A stretch of 64,000 bases of DNA, from the IMG/VR virus record IMGVR_UViG_3300040801_004034, positions 124,001 through 188,000 of that record. One strand, written 5' to 3'. Made by a program: the position numbers and the translations under genes. Shown here piece after piece: positions 1,099 through 19,475 of this stretch. The notes beneath the pieces were generated by a model. That model was not told where the DNA came from and ran no database searches. It worked only from the letters and a program-made list of their open reading frames with translations. Numbering within the stretch: the first letter of the stretch is position 1; every line of letters starts with the position of its first letter.

Positions 1099-1284
1099 TT
1101 AAACATAATTTAGTAAATGGCGCCTTGAGCCAAATAAAGAATCAAGGTTAGTACGTCCACTGTAAAAGCATCATGGGCACCTAAACCAATTATATAATTG
1201 AGAGAGGTGAAAGTAAGATTTATAAAATGGTGGCTGCACCAGTGAAGTTGAGATTTTTCTCCTTCTGGTGCAGCCTTAACTTTC

Positions 1285-1369
1285 AGGAATATGGCAGCTG
1301 TTCGATTCAGTAACTCTTCGGAGATGTGGTGTTGTCAGATACGTTCAAAGTTAGACTCCTTGTATTCCT
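1285..1369 (+). ncRNA. permuted tRNA-like (YrlA-like) RNA
   Basis: Closing stem AGGAATA/TATTCCT with a T-arm (CTG-TTCGATT-CAG) near the 5' end. Confidence 0.35.
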
Positions 1370-1710
1370 CAATTTTCAAATCCTAGTCGTCTAGAAGCAG
1401 AGGACACCAGCCAGTTCGTGCTGGAAACGATAAGTTGCGATTATCCTAGGACGTTTTAATCCATATAATCTAGGCAAGAGCTTGCAGGCTTATCATTTAG
1501 GTTATATGGCGCCAGATATATAGTAACTGCAATTACAAATATACCTGCGTTGTATCGGTCGGCTGGCGGAGACGCCCTCGTGAAGAGGGAGGTGATTGGT
1601 TCGATTCCAATATACAAATTCGATATTTATACCTATGCAAGTCATGTGTGAGTCATGGGGACGAAACATATAATAAACCACATGTCATGTATATGTTTCA
1701 AATTTTATAA

Positions 1711-1797
1711 GCCTAGGTGGCTCAGTTGGTCGACAGCGCCTGCTTTGTAAGCAGGATCCTACAGGACTCGTGGGTTCGAATCCCACCCTAGGCTCCA
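1711..1797 (+). tRNA. tRNA-Thr(UGU) with long variable arm
   Basis: Cloverleaf, loop TTTGTAA, CCA encoded. Confidence 0.9.
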
Positions 1798-1839
1798 TTT
1801 TGATTGTAGTTTTCGAGTTACGTTTGATTAAGTATTTAT

Positions 1840-2364
1840 ATGATAACATGTATGCAATGCAATAAATTGATTCCTAATCAGGAATCGATAGCTCATAAAT
1901 ATCAAAAACGTTTTTGTGATAGTTCTTGTAGTGCAAAATACAATAACACAAAACGTAAATATAAAAAACAACCAAAAAGCAAGTGTTTGAATTGCGATAA
2001 AGAAACAAAATATAGTACAACGAAGTTTTGTTCGCATCAATGTTCAGGAGATTTTAGAGCAAAACAAGCATATAAAACCAATATCGAAAAATATAAAGCT
2101 GGTGAATTAACAAATCGTAATCGTATATATTCATTTCTTGTTGAAGAATTTGGTAATATATGTAATATATGCCAGTTAGATGGTAACAATTGGAACGGTA
2201 AACCTATCAGATTATGGGTAGATCATATTGATGGGAATGCAACAAATAATTCACCATCGAATTTCAGACTGTTGTGTCCAAATTGCGAATCACAAACTGA
2301 TTTTTGTAGAGGTAAGAATTATGGAAATGGTAGATCATCAAGAGGTCTAAAACCATACGGGTAA
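1840..2364 (+). CDS. HNH homing endonuclease with zinc fingers
   Basis: CxxC repeats; VDHIDGNATNNSPSNFRLLCPNC HNH motif. Confidence 0.85.
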   Translation: MITCMQCNKLIPNQESIAHKYQKRFCDSSCSAKYNNTKRKYKKQPKSKCLNCDKETKYSTTKFCSHQCSGDFRAKQAYKTNIEKYKAGELTNRNRIYSFLVEEFGNICNICQLDGNNWNGKPIRLWVDHIDGNATNNSPSNFRLLCPNCESQTDFCRGKNYGNGRSSRGLKPYG

Positions 2365-2370
2365 TTTAAT

Positions 2371-2445
2371 GGATCTATAATATAACGGCTATTATCACCG
2401 GTTTTTACCCGGCTTATCCGGGTTCAAGTCCCGGTGGATCCACCA
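2371..2445 (+). tRNA. tRNA-Lys(UUU)
   Basis: Cloverleaf, loop TTTTTAC, CCA. Confidence 0.85.
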
Positions 2446-2448
2446 TTT

Positions 2449-2690
2449 AACGTCCCTAGAATCACAGGTATAGGTGCGCCAATGCAAACTATGCGGCATT
2501 GGTCAGTAATGCAATGCACCTTTGATGTAGATTTGCGAGATACGAAGTAGGTGTTGATAGCAGATAGCATAGGCTGTAAACAACACTGAGATAGTTGATC
2601 GTGTAGGAGAATTGCCTAGGAGGGATGACCATCTACAGTTCGAAAGCCGGAAGTCTTGGGTGTTAGGCTTGACAATCGGAGAGACGATAC
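2449..2690 (+). ncRNA. orphan structured RNA, family A copy 1
   Basis: GC-rich, noncoding, paired ends; motifs shared with 16292-16440. Confidence 0.5.
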
Positions 2691-2699
2691 AAATTTAAT

Positions 2700-2776
2700 G
2701 GGCGTGTAGTTCAAGTGGCAGAATACCGGATTTGCAATTCGGAGGTTTGGGATTTCGATTATCCCCACGTCCACCA
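2700..2776 (+). tRNA. tRNA-Ala(UGC)
   Basis: Cloverleaf, G3-U70, CCA. Confidence 0.9.
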
Positions 2777-2896
2777 TCTTAAAAATGATAACAGTATGGT
2801 CAGAACATAGCTATTCTAGATTAACTATGCAATGCACTTGAAGATTAGGACACTTCTTAAGTTATCGATAATGTATATCAGTCCTATACAATTTAT

Positions 2897-3014
2897 GATC
2901 GAGGTCGTTATAATCGACTCACCAAAATAATGTAGAGTACTATATGTTATTGCGGGAAATAAAAGATATGTAATGAGCTATTGCACAGGGGTGAAAATCC
3001 TCCATCGATCACCA
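2897..3014 (+). ncRNA. tRNA-like RNA with acceptor stem, T-arm and CCA but a noncanonical core
   Basis: GATCGA/TCGATC-A-CCA; T-like arm GGGG-TGAAAAT-CCTC. Confidence 0.45.
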
Positions 3015-17018: not shown

Positions 17019-17039
17019 GGTTTTAGTATAAATATATAC

Positions 17040-17771
17040 ATGAACTATGTATATAAAATTATAAATCGTATAAACGGTAAATATTATATCGGGATGAGAA
17101 AATGTCCAAAAGGTATAAAACCTGATCAAGATAATTATTTCGGATCTGGTAAAAATATTAAAAGAGCTATTAAAAAATATGGTATTGATTCATTTTCAAA
17201 AGAAATACTTTATGAATCATTAGATAGAGACTTTATTGCTGATAAAGAAAAGCAGTTAGTAAACAGTTTAACAGTTTCAGATAGTCAATGTTATAATATG
17301 CGTGTAGGTGGATATGGTGGATGGGATCATGTTAATAAAGATAGAACATCTGCTTTTTATTCAGAAATAGGTAAAAGGGGGTATAAAGAAGGTATTTGTA
17401 AGTTAACAAAACATGAAAGATCGCTGAGAAGTAAAAAATCTGCTATTACACGCAAAAAAACAAATTTCAAACATGAATATTCAGCTGAGCAACGTGAAAG
17501 AATGTCAAAATCACACAAAGGTTCAAAAAATTCACAATATGGTACAGTATGGTGTATTAAAGAAACATCACAAACCAATACTAAACATAACCGTAAAAAA
17601 TTCAAATATACTGAAATACCTAAAGGTTGGATAACAACTCAAGCATGGAAAGAAAAAAACGACAAACGAGACCCTAAAAAAACACGTTCGTGGTATAACG
17701 ATGGAAATAAAAGTTTTTTATTACTACCAGATGATGTAAGAATAAAACTACTTTCAAAAGGTAGAATATAA
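17040..17771 (+). CDS. GIY-YIG homing endonuclease
   Basis: VYKIINRINGKYYIGMR...YFGSG; YNMRVGG. Confidence 0.9.
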   Translation: MNYVYKIINRINGKYYIGMRKCPKGIKPDQDNYFGSGKNIKRAIKKYGIDSFSKEILYESLDRDFIADKEKQLVNSLTVSDSQCYNMRVGGYGGWDHVNKDRTSAFYSEIGKRGYKEGICKLTKHERSLRSKKSAITRKKTNFKHEYSAEQRERMSKSHKGSKNSQYGTVWCIKETSQTNTKHNRKKFKYTEIPKGWITTQAWKEKNDKRDPKKTRSWYNDGNKSFLLLPDDVRIKLLSKGRI

Positions 17772-17780
17772 CCACTTTAT

Positions 17781-17857
17781 GCAGCAGTCGCCTAACGGTA
17801 TGGCACTTCCTTGCCAAGGAAGAATAATTGCGAGTTCAAATCTCGCCTGCTGCACCA
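17781..17857 (+). tRNA. tRNA-Gly(GCC)
   Basis: Loop TTGCCAA, A73, CCA. Confidence 0.92.
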
Positions 17858-17872
17858 TTTAAACAAAAAATT

Positions 17873-18202
17873 ATGCAATTCAAAATTAATGAACATGATA
17901 ATCCGAGAATGATTGTCGAAGAAGCTCTGACTATAGCTGATAGAGTTCTTGTCGATAAACTTGACATACGAGAAAGTTATGCAAGACAATCATGTAATAT
18001 GACTGCTCAAGAATTTCTGAACAAATTCGGAGATGATCCTAAACTGCTTTGGATATTTAGACACTGTCATGGTGATGAATTTGATATCGGAGCATGTACA
18101 ATGTGTGAACGTGTTGATTATTTTCTTTGGGTTGTTCTTAGCAATACAAATGCTATTGTTTTAGCACGGAAACATAATTTACAAGAATATATGCCCGGAT
18201 AG
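17873..18202 (+). CDS. hypothetical protein
   Basis: ATG 17873; TAG stop lies inside the downstream tRNA-Thr. Confidence 0.6.
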   Translation: MQFKINEHDNPRMIVEEALTIADRVLVDKLDIRESYARQSCNMTAQEFLNKFGDDPKLLWIFRHCHGDEFDIGACTMCERVDYFLWVVLSNTNAIVLARKHNLQEYMPG

Positions 18203-18268
18203 TATAATGGATAATTACATTCCCTTGGTATGGGAGGGATCGGAGTTCAATTCTCCGTCCGGGCTCCA
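18193..18268 (+). tRNA. tRNA-Thr(GGU)
   Basis: Loop TTGGTAT, CCA. Confidence 0.9.
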
Positions 18269-18274
18269 TTTAAT

Positions 18275-18352
18275 GCTTACGTAGCACAATTTTGGTAGTG
18301 CACCTCACTCGTAAGGAGGTGGTTGTCGGTTCGAGCCCGATCGTAAGCTCCA
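18275..18352 (+). tRNA. tRNA-Thr(CGU)
   Basis: Loop CTCGTAA, CCA. Confidence 0.9.
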
Positions 18353-18400
18353 TTTACAAATATAAATCTTACTTTTTTTACATTACCGGGTTTTGGAAAA

Positions 18401-18612
18401 GGAACCCAGTTATAATAGTTGAAATTCTTTATTATTAAGTAGTATACTTGAAAAGGAACTATAGTATAATAGAGGAAGTTCTTTTAAAGTTTAATATTTG
18501 TTTCAAAAAATGGTTGATACCAGAGGAAACGTTGTTATAATAGGGTTATATTATTAATTCGATTATAATTATTTTCTAAATTGGTTGACATCAAAAGGAA
18601 CAGTGTTATAAT
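18401..18612 (+). promoter_or_regulatory. four tandem GGAAC-N5-TATAAT promoters
   Basis: Copies at 18401, 18455, 18525 (variant) and 18597; the last also has TTGACA at 18585. Confidence 0.75.
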
Positions 18613-18639
18613 AAGAGAGTAATTTTAGTTCTTTAACAG

Positions 18640-19475
18640 TTTAATAGATGGCGGTTTGGCGTCACTAGATAAAGCATCGTAAGGTGTTGAAAGCATATAG
18701 GTCTTAATATATGCGCTATGCAAATAGTCATCCATTCATTCCAAAGTTCTCATTGGCGAAAGTTGATGAGCATCAGTCCATTCTGGTGTGAAAGAACATA
18801 TTGAGGGTTATAAGTGTACCTAGGCCAACGGTGAAGGTATACGGAAATTAGTAGTTTCCTGTGACCATACTAACTCAGTACTTCCTTAGAATAAATACTA
18901 ACTCAGTACTTCCTTAGAATAAACGGTAGATATCGTGTCAGAGTTTAGCAGACGATGGCTGATTATCATTACAAACGGGCGAGAGTTCGTGAAGTAGCCT
19001 CCAAACTTCCGCTAGAAGAGGAGATCGGAGCGTGTTGTATTTCGTAGTTCAAAAGACCGCGAAGCGACAGGACATGCACGCTCTATAAGACACAAAGAAT
19101 ATAGATCAATGGTAGATCAATTGTATATAGAACAATATGTTGAAGGTTCAAGTCCTCCTTTTCATTAACACGAAAAAGCAAAAGCCATGTCCTTACGTTG
19201 TAGAAAATAGTCTAATACTATACACGAAAGTGAATATAGTGCTTGTGAACTCGCAAGGGGATCAAGTTTAGCGATACAAGTAATCAAGTTTTGAGAGTAA
19301 GCTCCTCACTTCTGATGAAAATATGCTGAGTATATAACGTACCATAGTAGAAATGCTACTACTTTAAAAAAGCGACTATTGTAACATACTATTTAAAAAG
19401 TAGTGGATAAGTTTTTAACCGATATAGGGTACGGAAACGAAAGTGTTACTGAAAAAGGTATAATCTCAGCCTCGG
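18640..19475 (+). ncRNA. large structured ncRNA, GOLLD-like, with an embedded tRNA-like element
   Basis: About 830 nt without ORFs, many hairpins, adjacent to the tRNA array, degenerate tRNA at 19097-19163. Confidence 0.55.
18867..18922 (+). repeat. perfect 28-bp tandem duplication
   Basis: ATACTAACTCAGTACTTCCTTAGAATAA x2. Confidence 0.95.

What the first reader, a model, noticed from the sequence alone, without database searches (positions are those of the whole stretch)
1100..19475. 18-kb punctuated RNA array with about 40 tRNAs and 20 or more non-tRNA RNAs
All 20 amino acids are covered. tRNAs end in CCA-TTT and are preceded by TTTTAT-like spacers. The same punctuation (CATTTT/CAATTTTAT) brackets many non-tRNA GC-rich units, e.g. 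1230-1277, 3455-3546, 5785-5925, 8113-8166, 9711-9846 and 11596-11688. This implies they are processed as discrete stable RNAs, so the array is a catalogue of unnamed small RNAs.
Basis: partly seen in the sequence, partly recalled or inferred. Interest (0 to 1): 0.6.

Follow-up and report, generated by a model that had tools for sequence, protein, structure and literature searches.

The report
Phage tRNA array with rRNA mimic
An 18-kb island in a 221-kb T4-like phage genome holds about 44 tRNA genes, a tmRNA and a GOLLD RNA among selfish nuclease genes, and one of its unnamed spacer RNAs belongs to a widespread phage RNA family, found in no database or paper I could search, that copies the ribosome's L11/GTPase-centre RNA.

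Summary
Window 1100-19475 holds every tRNA gene of a 221-kb T4-like phage: 39 by ARAGORN, about 44 with Rfam and relaxed calls, covering all 20 amino acids plus an amber suppressor. It also holds a tmRNA and a GOLLD RNA. CCA-TTT and TTTTAT spacers are 4-5 times enriched on the + strand.

It is not a pure RNA array. About 44% is protein-coding: five homing endonucleases, Pth2 and about 12 small ORFs. About 5 kb is left, forming about 30 non-canonical units, a dozen of them tRNA-shaped or truncated tRNA copies.

About half of the units are closed by a terminal helix that abuts the spacers, more than chance predicts. There is no RNA-seq and no close relative, and six of the seven units tested one by one have no homologue.

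The seventh unit, 15526-15814, belongs to a family of more than 80 phage loci. It reproduces 23S rRNA helices 42-44, the L11-binding GTPase-associated centre. Four helices show compensatory changes, it usually sits just 3' of a tRNA, and Rfam has no family for it. A model built without the window's copy scores it 96 bits.

The parts
1071..1098 (+). Promoter at the head of the array: TAGACA-16-TATAAT, overlapping the phage motif GGAAC-N5-TATAAT at 1083.
   Evidence: Consensus scan scores it 11 of 12. The phage-wide motif list includes it.
1119..1516 (+). 398-nt closed structured domain of unknown family.
   Evidence: Fold of 1105-1548 gives z = -3.44, with 0 of 100 shuffles as good, and is closed by UGGCGCC/GGCGCCA. 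The hairpin alone gives z = -5.65. No match in the phage database.
1711..6291 (+). tRNA block A: Thr, Lys, Ala, Tyr, Met, Asp x2, insert-bearing tRNA 3800-3916, Ile(tat), Pro, Ser(tga), Ile, Asn, Val, Phe, Gly, Glu. Orphan units are interleaved.
1840..2364 (+). HNH homing endonuclease gene.
   Evidence: PHROG HNH families, E = 6.5e-19. Nucleotide matches to HNH genes in the tRNA regions of T4-like phages.
2887..3014 (+). tRNA-shaped orphan with a terminal helix, a T-arm-like hairpin and a 3' ACCA.
   Evidence: The regex-defined unit 2896-3014 has an end duplex of -11.0 kcal/mol. Sequence read.
3108..3242 (+). Cloverleaf-like orphan: a 7-bp terminal helix and three hairpins.
   Evidence: z = -3.57.
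3256..3366 (+). tRNA-like unit with an insertion and two T-arm-like hairpins.
   Evidence: Found by ARAGORN at 85% thresholds with introns allowed. End duplex -9.0 kcal/mol.
3455..3546 (+). Cloverleaf-like orphan with a 9-bp terminal helix, followed by CAATTTTAT.
   Evidence: Fold z = -1.8. End duplex -11.7 kcal/mol.
3640..3716 (+). tRNA-like unit with a GCCA end. It has no Rfam tRNA match at E <= 1 and appears only at relaxed ARAGORN thresholds.
3962..4636 (+). HNH homing endonuclease gene.
   Evidence: phrog_1271, E = 3.3e-7. Pfam HNH_2, weak.
4939..4995 (+). Partial tRNA lacking an acceptor stem; a degenerate copy resembling tRNA-Ile(gat).
   Evidence: Rfam tRNA 35 bits, model positions 9-63.
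5192..5269 (+). tRNA-like Asn(gtt) unit with a GCCA end and a non-canonical T loop.
   Evidence: sequence read.
5606..5778 (+). tRNA-like unit with an insertion of about 92 nt in the anticodon loop and a GCCA end.
   Evidence: ARAGORN with introns allowed. End duplex -11.4 kcal/mol.
5788..5921 (+). Orphan without significant structure.
   Evidence: z = +0.60.
6299..6373 (+). tRNA-shaped orphan with a 7-bp acceptor-like helix and a UCCA end.
   Evidence: End duplex -10.6 kcal/mol. Fold.
6670..10011 (+). tRNA block B: Lys(ctt), Arg, Gln, Met, Val(aac), Pro, Cys, Ile, Arg, Gln x2. ORFs and orphan units are interleaved.
6932..7540 (+). GIY-YIG homing endonuclease gene, SegB-like.
   Evidence: phrog_314, E = 1.3e-40. 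About 68% nucleotide identity to T4 segB over 267 nt.
7946..8309 (+). Two orphan units. The second, 8161-8292, ends in ACCA.
   Evidence: Whole gap z = -0.04. 8111-8168 z = -0.13. No match in the phage database.
9713..9840 (+). Closed orphan unit with an 8-bp terminal helix and four hairpins.
   Evidence: z = -2.45. No match in the phage database.
10778..10852 (+). Truncated copy of tRNA-Val(tac), immediately 5' of an HNH gene; a scar of endonuclease insertion.
   Evidence: It aligns with the 5' half of the full gene at 11506-11591 and then breaks off.
10861..11520 (+). HNH homing endonuclease gene, flanked by the two tRNA-Val(tac) copies.
   Evidence: phrog_655, E = 2.6e-41.
11596..11779 (+). 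Two cloverleaf-like orphan units, 11596-11684 and 11695-11779. Each has a 7-bp terminal helix followed by (G)ACATTTTAT.
   Evidence: Folds (z = -2.38 and -0.42). End duplexes -9.9 and -9.1 kcal/mol.
14021..14226 (+). tRNA-Ser(gct) and an amber-suppressor tRNA(cta).
14394..14732 (+). Pth2-type peptidyl-tRNA hydrolase gene.
   Evidence: NCBIfam Pth2, E = 9e-13, below the curated cut-off. Pfam PTH2.
15526..15814 (+). GAC-mimic RNA. Helix P1 pairs 15529-15535 with 15805-15811. The H43 copy is at 15537-15561, with its loop core at 15542-15556. The junction UUUAAAGAGU follows. Helix P-ins pairs 15571-15574 with 15784-15787 and encloses an insert of about 210 nt. The H44 copy GCGUAAAAGC is at 15792-15801.
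   Evidence: Model R1, built from 21 other members, scores it 96.3 bits, E = 1.6e-28, over its full length. The MFE fold reproduces P1 and H43 in full and H44 in part.
15447..16522 (+). tRNA block E: His, Leu(taa), a Leu-like unit with an insert at 15964-16067, Leu(caa), Trp, Met.
16293..16661 (+). Two closed orphan units, 16293-16439 and 16529-16661, on either side of tRNA-Met.
   Evidence: End duplexes -15.0 and -11.0 kcal/mol. Folds. No match in the phage database.
16670..17019 (+). tmRNA with tag peptide GENQLMAA.
   Evidence: ARAGORN. Rfam 85.4 bits.
17040..17771 (+). GIY-YIG homing endonuclease gene.
   Evidence: phrog_314, E = 1.1e-33.
18401..18612 (+). Four tandem promoters in front of GOLLD.
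   Evidence: Consensus scan scores 12 of 12 and 11 of 12. GGAAC-N5-TATAAT at 18401, 18455, 18525 and 18597.
18640..19472 (+). GOLLD RNA. The variable 5' domain is inferred. The conserved 3' domain is 19025-19472, with a nested tRNA-like element at 19094-19167.
   Evidence: Rfam RF02032, 179.4 bits against a cut-off of 150. The gap 18353-19024 folds with z = -3.3. Published GOLLD architecture is quoted.

Best explanation
The region is the translation-RNA island of a T4-like phage. It resembles the T4 tRNA cluster (eight tRNAs, species I and II RNAs, segB) but is about ten times larger.

It consists of at least five same-strand transcription units, driven by the phage's own GGAAC-N5-TATAAT promoters. 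Together they encode:
- about 44 tRNAs for all 20 amino acids, plus an amber suppressor;
- a tmRNA;
- a GOLLD RNA of about 0.8 kb;
- a Pth2 hydrolase;
- five homing endonucleases that live on tRNA genes;
- about a dozen small ORFs.

About 30 non-canonical units lie between these genes. They sit in the same precursors and are bounded by the same U-rich spacers as the tRNAs. By inference they are released by the same processing: RNase P at an acceptor-like terminal helix, and RNase E or 3' trimming in the spacers.

The units are a mixture of three kinds.
1. One unit, 15526-15814, is a proven member of a widespread phage RNA family. It copies the 23S rRNA H42-H44 domain that binds ribosomal protein uL11 and contacts translational GTPases. 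It most likely acts as a decoy or sponge for a ligand of that domain: uL11 itself, a factor such as RelA that needs uL11 and the GAC, or a toxin or antibiotic aimed at it.
2. About a dozen units are tRNA-shaped RNAs with CCA ends but odd loops or inserts, or are truncated tRNA copies. These are products of endonuclease-driven turnover, and some may be decoys.
3. About 15 units are lineage-specific. About half are closed by terminal helices, and their status is open.

Shown: gene content, motifs, family membership and covariation. Inferred: co-transcription, processing, stability and the decoy function.
For: Identity of the phage and the island.

Promoters: GGAAC-N5-TATAAT occurs 57 times in the genome. 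Eleven copies lie on the + strand at 755-19523: one just 5' of the region, one at its 3' edge and nine within it. The best sigma-70-like sites are at 1071 and in front of GOLLD.

Punctuation.

Terminal closure of the orphan units:
- Own ends average -7.3 kcal/mol against -3.5 for mismatched ends. Nine of 23 units reach -8 or lower, against 3.8% of mismatched pairs; permutation p < 5e-5.
- With regex-defined units, 4 of 9 reach -8 against 9% of mismatched pairs, p = 0.006.

tRNA-shaped units and scars.

GAC mimic:
- A 39-nt stretch matches 23S rRNA in all 5,426 E. coli genomes. Rfam LSU model positions 1098-1144 are the only Rfam hit for a compact member of the family.
- The core matches the 60-nt L11-binding RNA used in structural work.
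- Eleven large GenBank phages carry it, unannotated.
- Of 80 IMG/VR hits examined (83 found by the pattern scan), 79 are the mimic and not rRNA.
- 62 of those 79 have a same-strand tRNA within 2 kb, often 14-25 nt upstream.
- The H43 pair 1058:1080 is GC 25, UA 19, AU 12, CG 1, with none unpaired.
- P1 is 93% paired against 56 +/- 2.5% with shuffled partners.
- P-ins is 80% paired against 51%.
- RNAalifold finds all four helices, and 14 of 23 pairs show compensatory changes.
- Model R1 scores the window's copy at E = 1.6e-28.
Against: - No RNA data exist. Only DNA runs of one microbial-mat study hold this sequence.
- No relative is close enough to test the other orphans. The nearest MCP is 81% identical and the nearest hub protein 61%, and those contigs carry no array at this locus. 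The two complete relatives have unrelated, canonical arrays.
- All other copies of this phage are 100% identical.
- Most orphan gaps fold no better than shuffles, although the proven GAC mimic itself scores only z = -1.2.
- The orphans have no paralogues in the genome.
- The host, and so its RNases, is unknown.
- Binding of the mimic to uL11 or any other ligand is untested.
- The H44 loop in the window's copy is GUAAAA, not the GUAAYA of the rest of the family.
Confidence: 0.7

Rival explanations
1. Apart from tmRNA, GOLLD and the GAC mimic, the orphan units are junk. They would be decaying tRNA pseudogenes, endonuclease insertion scars and spacer sequence, transcribed only because they sit between tRNAs and degraded after processing.
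For: - A truncated tRNA-Val copy lies right next to an HNH gene, and there is a partial tRNA at 4939-4995.
- About 12 units keep only some tRNA features.
- Five homing endonucleases are in the island.
- Six orphans have no homologue in 2.3 Gb of phage sequence.
- Most folding z-scores are near zero.
- The arrays of related phages are compact and canonical.
Against: - Unit ends pair with each other well above chance, exactly at the spacers. Neutral decay would erase this.
- Phage genomes rarely keep 5 kb of junk.
- The one unit for which homologues exist proved to be a strongly constrained RNA, despite a z-score of only -1.2.
Confidence: 0.3
2. The tRNA-shaped orphans and the odd tRNAs (long variable arms, anticodon-loop inserts, altered T loops) are functional variants selected for one of two reasons. 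Either they escape or soak up host tRNA-targeting defence nucleases, or they make the genes immune to the island's own tRNA-gene-cutting endonucleases.
For: - Many of these units keep a 7-bp acceptor helix and an encoded CCA while their loops diverge.
- T4 SegB recognises the T-stem-loop sequence of tRNA genes (PMC2330249), and a SegB-like gene lies in the island.
- The phage encodes two RNA ligases, the class of enzyme T4 uses to repair cleaved tRNA (the genes; the T4 role is from my own knowledge).
Against: No defence system or cleavage site is known for this unknown host. No variant could be compared with a homologue. Aminoacylation and stability are untested.
Confidence: 0.25
3. The 15526-15814 element is only a captured piece of a host 23S rRNA gene, for example a transduction or assembly relic or the remains of a homing site, and not a functional mimic.
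For: A 36-39-nt stretch is 92-94% identical to bacterial 23S rRNA. One GenBank phage record, Paenibacillus Pd_22F, does contain a true 23S fragment.
Against: - The flanks are not rRNA.
- P1 and P-ins covary freely while H43, the junction and H44 stay fixed.
- An insert of 80-330 nt always sits between positions 1090 and 1091.
- More than 80 independent phage loci share this layout, co-oriented with tRNAs.
- Model R1 scores true rRNA fragments well below the mimics.
Confidence: 0.02

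Closest known systems
Bacteriophage T4 tRNA gene cluster (8 tRNAs, species I/rnaC and species II/rnaD stable RNAs, segB)
   Same: - One-strand cluster transcribed from a phage promoter as a polycistronic precursor.
- tRNAs are interleaved with small stable RNAs of unknown function and a GIY-YIG endonuclease that targets tRNA genes (PMC2330249; annotation).
- T4 rnaC ends in a canonical T-arm and rnaD in CACCA, so both are tRNA-derived in shape, like many orphans here.
- The island's GIY-YIG gene is about 68% identical in nucleotide sequence to segB.
   Different: - About 18 kb against 1.75 kb.
- About 44 tRNAs against 8.
- Five endonucleases against one.
- This island adds tmRNA, GOLLD, Pth2 and the GAC mimic.
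- None of the seven orphan stretches searched on their own matched a T4-type phage record, and the only non-rRNA matches of 15524-15819 were the GAC mimic.
tRNA arrays with GOLLD RNA and HNH endonuclease (mycobacteria, Lactobacillales prophages, marine phages)
   Same: More than 30 tRNA genes with a GOLLD RNA that itself contains a tRNA or pseudo-tRNA, together with HNH genes (PMC6582537; bioRxiv 2024.12.08.627333). The GOLLD here passes Rfam's gathering score and has a nested tRNA-like element.
   Different: Here the array is in a T4-like virulent-type genome. GOLLD has four tandem consensus promoters of its own. The array carries many additional non-tRNA units.
23S rRNA GTPase-associated centre (nt 1051-1108, helices 42-44), the binding site of uL11 and thiostrepton
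   Same: - The H43 stem-loop, the 1082-1090 junction and the H44 hairpin are copied nearly base for base.
- The 1058:1080 pair is kept by covariation.
- Position 1061 varies, and A is one of the common variants. U1061A is the substitution used to stabilise the tertiary fold of the isolated domain.
   Different: - It is a free-standing RNA of 150-400 nt in phage tRNA islands.
- H42 is replaced by a covarying P1 of unrelated sequence.
- An extra variable arm (P-ins) is inserted between 1090 and 1091.
- U1101 is replaced by A.
Ribosomal-protein leader RNAs that mimic rRNA binding sites (for example the L10 and L1 leaders)
   Same: A non-ribosomal RNA reproduces an rRNA protein-binding site and so competes for the protein. 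This statement rests on established knowledge of r-protein autoregulation, not on a test here.
   Different: Those leaders are cis-regulatory 5' UTRs of host r-protein operons and mimic loosely. This element is a phage-borne, tRNA-adjacent, near-exact copy with no downstream r-protein gene, and the phage encodes no uL11.
Mitochondrial tRNA punctuation model
   Same: tRNA-like structures mark the cleavage points that release the neighbouring RNAs from a polycistronic precursor. This is an analogy of mechanism only.
   Different: This is a bacterial virus. The spacers are short U-rich runs, and the released units are themselves tRNA-shaped.

Membership tests
Phage tRNA array (T4-type tRNA region) | Many tRNA genes clustered on one strand of a phage genome. 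| tested here: met
   39 to about 44 tRNA genes, all on the + strand within 18 kb, and none elsewhere in the 221-kb genome.
Phage tRNA array (T4-type tRNA region) | Resident homing endonuclease genes associated with tRNA genes. | tested here: met
   Three HNH and two GIY-YIG genes. One is SegB-like at the nucleotide level. One is flanked by duplicated tRNA-Val.
Phage tRNA array (T4-type tRNA region) | Co-transcription into a precursor that is processed into tRNAs and other stable RNAs. | not testable with these tools
   Only promoter motifs and spacers bear on this. No RNA runs hold the sequence.
GOLLD RNA (RF02032) | Score above Rfam's gathering threshold over the whole model. | tested here: met
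   179.4 bits against 150, model positions 1-416.
GOLLD RNA (RF02032) | Location in a phage or prophage next to tRNAs, often with a tRNA inside. | tested here: met
   It lies at the 3' end of the array, with a tRNA-like element at 19094-19167 inside it (literature).
tmRNA (RF00023) | Covariance-model score above threshold and a tag reading frame. | tested here: met
   85.4 bits against 47. Tag peptide GENQLMAA*.
Phage GAC-mimic RNA (family defined here, model R1) | Full-length match to a covariance model built from other members. | tested here: met
   96.3 bits, E = 1.6e-28, model positions 1-200, at 15526-15814. The model was built from 21 IMG/VR sequences that do not include the window.
Phage GAC-mimic RNA (family defined here, model R1) | The P1, H43, P-ins and H44 helices are present. 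| tested here: met
   All four can be read in the window's sequence. The MFE fold reproduces P1 and H43 in full and H44 in part.
Phage GAC-mimic RNA (family defined here, model R1) | Placed on the same strand as tRNA genes, directly after one of them. | tested here: met
   It starts 6 nt after tRNA-His (15447-15523) and ends 9 nt before tRNA-Leu (15820). Family-wide, 62 of 79 loci have a same-strand tRNA within 2 kb.
Genuine 23S rRNA fragment | rRNA sequence continues on both sides of H43-H44 without an insert. | tested here: not met
   The flanks are unrelated to rRNA and an insert of about 210 nt lies between positions 1090 and 1091.
uL11-binding RNA | Binds ribosomal protein uL11, or thiostrepton, with the GAC tertiary fold. 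| not testable with these tools
   Only sequence identity to the 1050-1109 binding fragment is shown. No tool for RNA-protein binding was available.
tRNA (RF00005), applied to the orphan units | Covariance-model match. | tested here: not met
   No Rfam tRNA hit at E <= 1 for 1119-1516, 2452-3014, 3108-3242, 3455-3546, 3640-3716, 5192-5355, 5788-5921, 6021-6203, 6299-6373, 7957-8292, 9713-9840, 11596-11779 or 16293-16661. Some of these are picked up only by ARAGORN at 85% thresholds.

The most novel reading that the evidence does not exclude
Large phages carry, inside their tRNA islands, a dedicated decoy of the ribosome's GTPase-associated centre. When expressed with the tRNAs, it would titrate uL11 or a factor or toxin that recognises the uL11-rRNA stalk base. 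That could, for example, blunt RelA-dependent stringent signalling or a ribosome-directed defence. On this reading, the other closed orphan units of this island are further mimics of host RNAs, still unrecognised.
Probability: 0.35. Interest if true: 0.9.

Novelty: new variant of a known kind. Interest (0 to 1): 0.75.

Why it matters
Phage tRNA islands are usually annotated as 'tRNAs plus gaps'. This one shows that the gaps can hold real, strongly constrained RNAs.

One gap led to a family present in well-known cultured jumbo and large phages: GAP32, CBB, XacN1, pf16, RSP15, ME3 and Aeromonas 4_4572. It is also in at least 79 IMG/VR contigs and in tRNA arrays on contigs binned with bacterial genomes from several phyla. 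It is annotated in none of the eleven GenBank phage records.

I found no earlier report, in Rfam or in the papers I could search, of a near-exact viral copy of the uL11/thiostrepton/GTPase-factor docking site. Such a copy points to a way for phages to interfere with ribosome assembly, stringent control, or ribosome-targeting toxins and antibiotics. The idea is directly testable, because cultured phage-host pairs carry the element.

The case also shows that folding z-scores cannot dismiss such units: the proven family member scores only -1.2.

Tried and rejected
1. Expression. The run search found only DNA runs of one microbial-mat study. It could not have shown RNA ends.

2. Comparison with relatives.
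- The hub protein gave one identical contig and one 49% relative without tRNAs.
- The 489-aa array protein has a single 34% homologue among 5.8 billion proteins.
- 80 loci with an MCP relative (67-81% identity) were fetched, and none of the 43 longer ones scanned has a tRNA within 10 kb.
- Ten longer fragments have no tRNA at all.
- The two complete relatives have 16 and 8 canonical tRNAs and no detectable nucleotide similarity to this array; even the tmRNA is only loosely alignable.
- Hub relatives at 61% identity have protein genes where the array lies here.

3. Microdiversity. Four other contigs of the same phage are 100% identical.

4. Paralogues. No orphan resembles another orphan or any other part of the genome.

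5. Thermodynamics. Only 6 of 23 gaps reach z <= -2 on the + strand, and the strands do not differ clearly. I rejected this as a discriminator after the proven family member scored -1.2.

6. Homologue searches for six further orphans in GenBank phages, and for all orphans in 1.8 Mb of fetched phage arrays, found nothing.

7. Rfam at E <= 1 names none of the orphans.

8. A phage-encoded uL11 was sought and not found.

9. TAG recoding. TAG ends about 17% of long ORFs, so the suppressor tRNA does not signal a changed genetic code.

10. Tre23-type ADP-ribosylation of H44 (PMC8661411) is kept only as one possible target of a decoy. It is not supported directly.

11. Seven literature searches and a search for the sequence string itself found no description of the mimic. 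About 1.7 million PMC articles and subscription journals were not searched.

Full report
WHAT THE WINDOW IS.
The window is bases 124001-188000 of a single 221,292-bp contig with 35.5% GC. It encodes a gp23-type major head protein, a T4-type portal, a sheath stabiliser, a baseplate hub, a DNA ligase and two RNA ligases. The head protein is only about 32-34% identical to any GenBank phage. It is 70-81% identical to many uncultured IMG/VR contigs. The genome is therefore a distant, uncultured T4-like phage. Near-identical DNA occurs only in DNA runs of one microbial-mat study.

CHECK OF THE OBSERVATION.
- ARAGORN finds 39 tRNAs and a tmRNA, all on the + strand between 1549 and 19167, and none elsewhere in the genome.
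- Rfam confirms 36 tRNAs above gathering score, the tmRNA, and a GOLLD RNA at 19025-19472 (179 bits against a cut-off of 150).
- With looser filters Rfam adds a tRNA with a 40-nt insert in the anticodon loop at 3800-3913.
- Glu(ttc) is an Rfam-only call. The two Ser tRNAs appear only at relaxed ARAGORN thresholds. With these three genes all 20 amino acids are covered, and there is also an amber suppressor (cta).
- Of 43 tRNA-type genes, 35 encode CCA, 31 read CCATTT, and 31 have TTT(T)A just upstream. These motifs are 4-5 times enriched on the + strand of the region.
- The 'array' is 44% protein-coding. It holds three HNH and two GIY-YIG homing endonuclease genes, a Pth2 peptidyl-tRNA hydrolase, a 489-aa membrane-like protein and about ten small ORFs.
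- About 5.2 kb is neither a recognised RNA nor an ORF.

TRANSCRIPTION (INFERRED).
A phage-specific motif, GGAAC-N5-TATAAT, occurs 57 times in the genome. Most copies lie every ~300 bp on the - strand at genome positions 189-220 kb, a spacing that would suit an early-gene region (not annotated here). Eleven copies are on the + strand in or beside the array, at 755, 1083, 10018, 11890, 14122, 15199, 18401, 18455, 18525, 18597 and 19523. The best sigma-70-like matches in the first 20 kb are the site at 1071-1098, at the head of the array, and two of the four tandem sites in front of GOLLD. The first nine kilobases (1105-10011) contain no internal promoter of this kind. Their tRNAs and orphan units must therefore come from one precursor.

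THE ORPHAN UNITS.
About 30 units can be drawn between the spacers.
- About a dozen are tRNA-shaped. They have a 7-bp terminal helix, often a T-arm-like hairpin and an NCCA end, but non-canonical loops or large inserts: 2887-3014, 3256-3366, 3640-3716, 5192-5269, 5606-5778, 6299-6373, 8161-8292, 10469-10543 and 15964-16067. Others are truncated tRNA copies: 4939-4995 and 10778-10852.
- The copy at 10778-10852 is the 5' half of tRNA-Val(tac). It sits directly in front of an HNH gene whose other flank is the intact tRNA-Val, which makes it a scar of endonuclease insertion.
- Other units are cloverleaf-like or multi-hairpin structures closed by terminal helices of 7-11 bp that abut the spacers: 3108-3242, 3455-3546, 9713-9840, 11596-11684, 11695-11779, 16293-16439, 16529-16661 and the 398-nt domain 1119-1516.
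- I compared each unit's own 5' and 3' ends with mismatched ends taken from other units. Own ends pair much better: mean -7.3 against -3.5 kcal/mol, and 39% against 3.8% reach -8 or lower, permutation p < 5e-5.
- When the units are defined blindly by a regular expression for the spacer, the effect persists (4 of 9 against 9%, p = 0.006). True tRNAs reach 63%.
- Folding z-scores are mostly unremarkable.
- The orphans have no paralogues in the genome.

COMPARATIVE DEAD ENDS.
- Every other copy of this phage in public assemblies is 100% identical.
- Relatives with 61% hub or 70-81% MCP identity have protein genes, not tRNAs, next to the hub gene.
- The two complete relatives have 16 and 8 canonical tRNAs with no detectable nucleotide similarity to this array.
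- The array is therefore lineage-specific, and covariation cannot be tested for most orphans.

THE ONE ORPHAN THAT HAS RELATIVES.
The unit between tRNA-His and tRNA-Leu(taa) contains 39 nt identical to an unannotated stretch of Aeromonas phage 4_4572. The same stretch is 87-95% identical to stretches in Pseudomonas phages pf16, Astolliot, Milchi and UNO-G1W1, Cronobacter GAP32, Pectobacterium CBB, Xanthomonas XacN1, Ralstonia RSP15, Vibrio 2.275.O and Acinetobacter ME3.

The same 36-39 nt match 23S rRNA in all 5,426 complete E. coli genomes. They fall within the 60-nt L11-binding fragment, nt 1050-1109, that is used in structural work (PMC1802607). For a compact family member the only Rfam hit is LSU rRNA model positions 1098-1144.

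In the annotated phages the element lies in intergenic gaps, co-oriented with the flanking genes. In pf16 and UNO-G1W1 it lies between two tRNA genes.

An exact-pattern scan of IMG/VR returned 83 stretches. Of the 80 examined, 79 are this element and not rRNA. 62 of the 79 have a same-strand tRNA within 2 kb and 55 have one within 500 nt. The tRNA often ends 14-25 nt upstream, as it does in the window.

ARCHITECTURE OF THE FAMILY. It has four helices.
1. P1 takes the place of H42. It has nine consecutive pairs, each 86-100% paired, with up to six pair types. Mean pairing is 0.934, against 0.559 +/- 0.025 when partners are shuffled (maximum 0.645 in 2,000 shuffles).
2. H43 has the rRNA sequence. 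The 1058:1080 pair is GC 25, UA 19, AU 12 and CG 1, with no unpaired case in 57 sequences.
3. After the junction UUUAAAGAGU comes P-ins, a covarying helix that closes a variable insert of 80-330 nt.
4. Then follows UUUG and an H44 copy, GCGUAAYAGC-ACAC. This motif is present in 44 of 60 distinct elements, one of them probably a chance match 590 nt downstream.

RNAalifold on 21 compact members finds all four helices independently, and 14 of 23 pairs show compensatory changes. A covariance model built from those 21 sequences scores the window's copy at 96.3 bits, E = 1.6e-28, over its full length at 15526-15814. The same model finds all the GenBank carriers and nothing in the arrays of the two complete relatives.

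The family-specific 3' motif occurs in only 44 stretches across the genome collection (one genome for each of about 185,600 species). These are mostly contigs of metagenome-assembled genomes, and some carry 12-25 tRNAs. The family is therefore mainly phage-borne.

The phage encodes no uL11 of its own.

HOW IT MOST LIKELY WORKS.
Shown: the gene content, the spacers, the promoter motifs, the closure statistics, the family membership and the covariation.
Inferred: the precursors are cut at the acceptor-like helices and U-rich spacers by the host's tRNA-processing enzymes, as in the T4 cluster. Closed units would survive this, and the rest would be degraded.

For the mimic, what is conserved is exactly the set of nucleotides that form the uL11/thiostrepton pocket and the factor-docking surface. 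The scaffold helices are free to vary. The simplest reading is a competitor for a ligand of that rRNA domain. My rough split is:
- a sponge for uL11 or for a uL11-dependent factor such as RelA, 0.35;
- a decoy for a GAC-directed toxin or antibiotic, 0.2. A toxin that ADP-ribosylates H44 is known (PMC8661411);
- another role, for example docking of tRNA elbows or of translation factors, 0.25;
- unknown, the remainder.

COMPARISON WITH WHAT IS KNOWN.
The island works like the T4 tRNA region, which is one precursor for eight tRNAs, species I and II RNAs and segB (PMC2330249). T4's two stable RNAs are themselves tRNA-like at their 3' ends. One endonuclease gene here is about 68% identical in nucleotide sequence to segB.

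Large tRNA arrays with GOLLD and HNH genes are also known. The island as a whole is therefore a very large new member of a known kind.

The GAC-mimic family has no Rfam family, and I found no paper describing it. The literature I could search is incomplete, so prior description cannot be excluded.

VERDICT.
The idea of a 'catalogue of unnamed small RNAs' is proven for one unit, plausible for roughly ten closed units, and unlikely for the tRNA scars and the unstructured spacers.

Noticed in passing
Whole genome; window + strand at 755, 1083, 10018, 11890, 14122, 15199, 18401-18597 and 19523; window - strand at 40688-62990: The phage-specific promoter-like motif GGAAC-N5-TATAAT occurs 57 times. 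It is densest on the - strand at genome positions 189-220 kb, every ~300 bp (not annotated here; the spacing would suit early genes). It marks the transcription units of the RNA island.
   Followed up: partly
window 14150-14226 and 14394-14732: An amber-suppressor tRNA (anticodon CUA) lies in one promoter-to-terminator unit with a Pth2-type peptidyl-tRNA hydrolase. TAG still ends about 17% of long ORFs, so there is no sign of a changed genetic code.
   Followed up: partly
window 1711-1797, 4620-4709, 4734-4827, 5096-5181, 7696-7787, 11506-11591: tRNAs for Thr, Ile(tat), Pro, Asn, Met and Val are 86-94 nt long with extra arms, although these identities normally have short variable loops. The two complete relatives also have a 92-95-nt tRNA-Ile(tat). 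The cause is unknown; it may give immunity to tRNA-gene-cutting endonucleases.
   Followed up: no
window 3800-3916 and 5606-5778: Two tRNA genes carry inserts of 40 nt and about 92 nt in the anticodon loop. These are far too short for group I introns. The first gene is otherwise a strong tRNA (56.5 bits). Whether the inserts are removed is unknown.
   Followed up: partly
window 53150-54160 (-) and 54501-55598 (-): Two RNA ligase genes lie side by side: one PHROG 'RNA ligase' and one Rnl1-like 'RNA ligase and tail fiber attachment catalyst'. This is the enzyme class T4 uses to repair cleaved tRNA (T4's use is from my own knowledge).
   Followed up: no
window 24817-25725 (+), next to the major head gene 25846-27375 (-): A QueF-like 7-cyano-7-deazaguanine reductase (261 bits, below the 293-bit cut-off). 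It is conserved at the same place in relatives, which hints at deazaguanine modification of DNA or tRNA.
   Followed up: partly
window about 18868-18925, in the inferred 5' domain of GOLLD: A perfect tandem duplication of about 27 nt (ACTAACTCAGTACTTCCTTAGAATAAA x2), read from the sequence.
   Followed up: no
window 5528-5597: An orphan gap containing a direct repeat, GTGAGGAGCATGA, twice, 23 nt apart.
   Followed up: no
L102 (Paenibacillus phage Pd_22F, MZ092003.1, about 83976-84013 and flanks): This GenBank phage record contains a genuine stretch of 23S rRNA, with rRNA flanks on both sides and no insert. It is not the mimic. It is probably host DNA in the assembly or a packaged fragment (R1 scores it 64.8 bits over 68 nt).
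   Followed up: partly
L090-L093 (relatives with 59-61% hub identity), downstream of the hub gene: Where this phage has the 18-kb RNA island, its relatives have a PQ-loop protein and proteins of 590-1,430 aa. The island is therefore an insertion or replacement specific to this lineage.
   Followed up: partly
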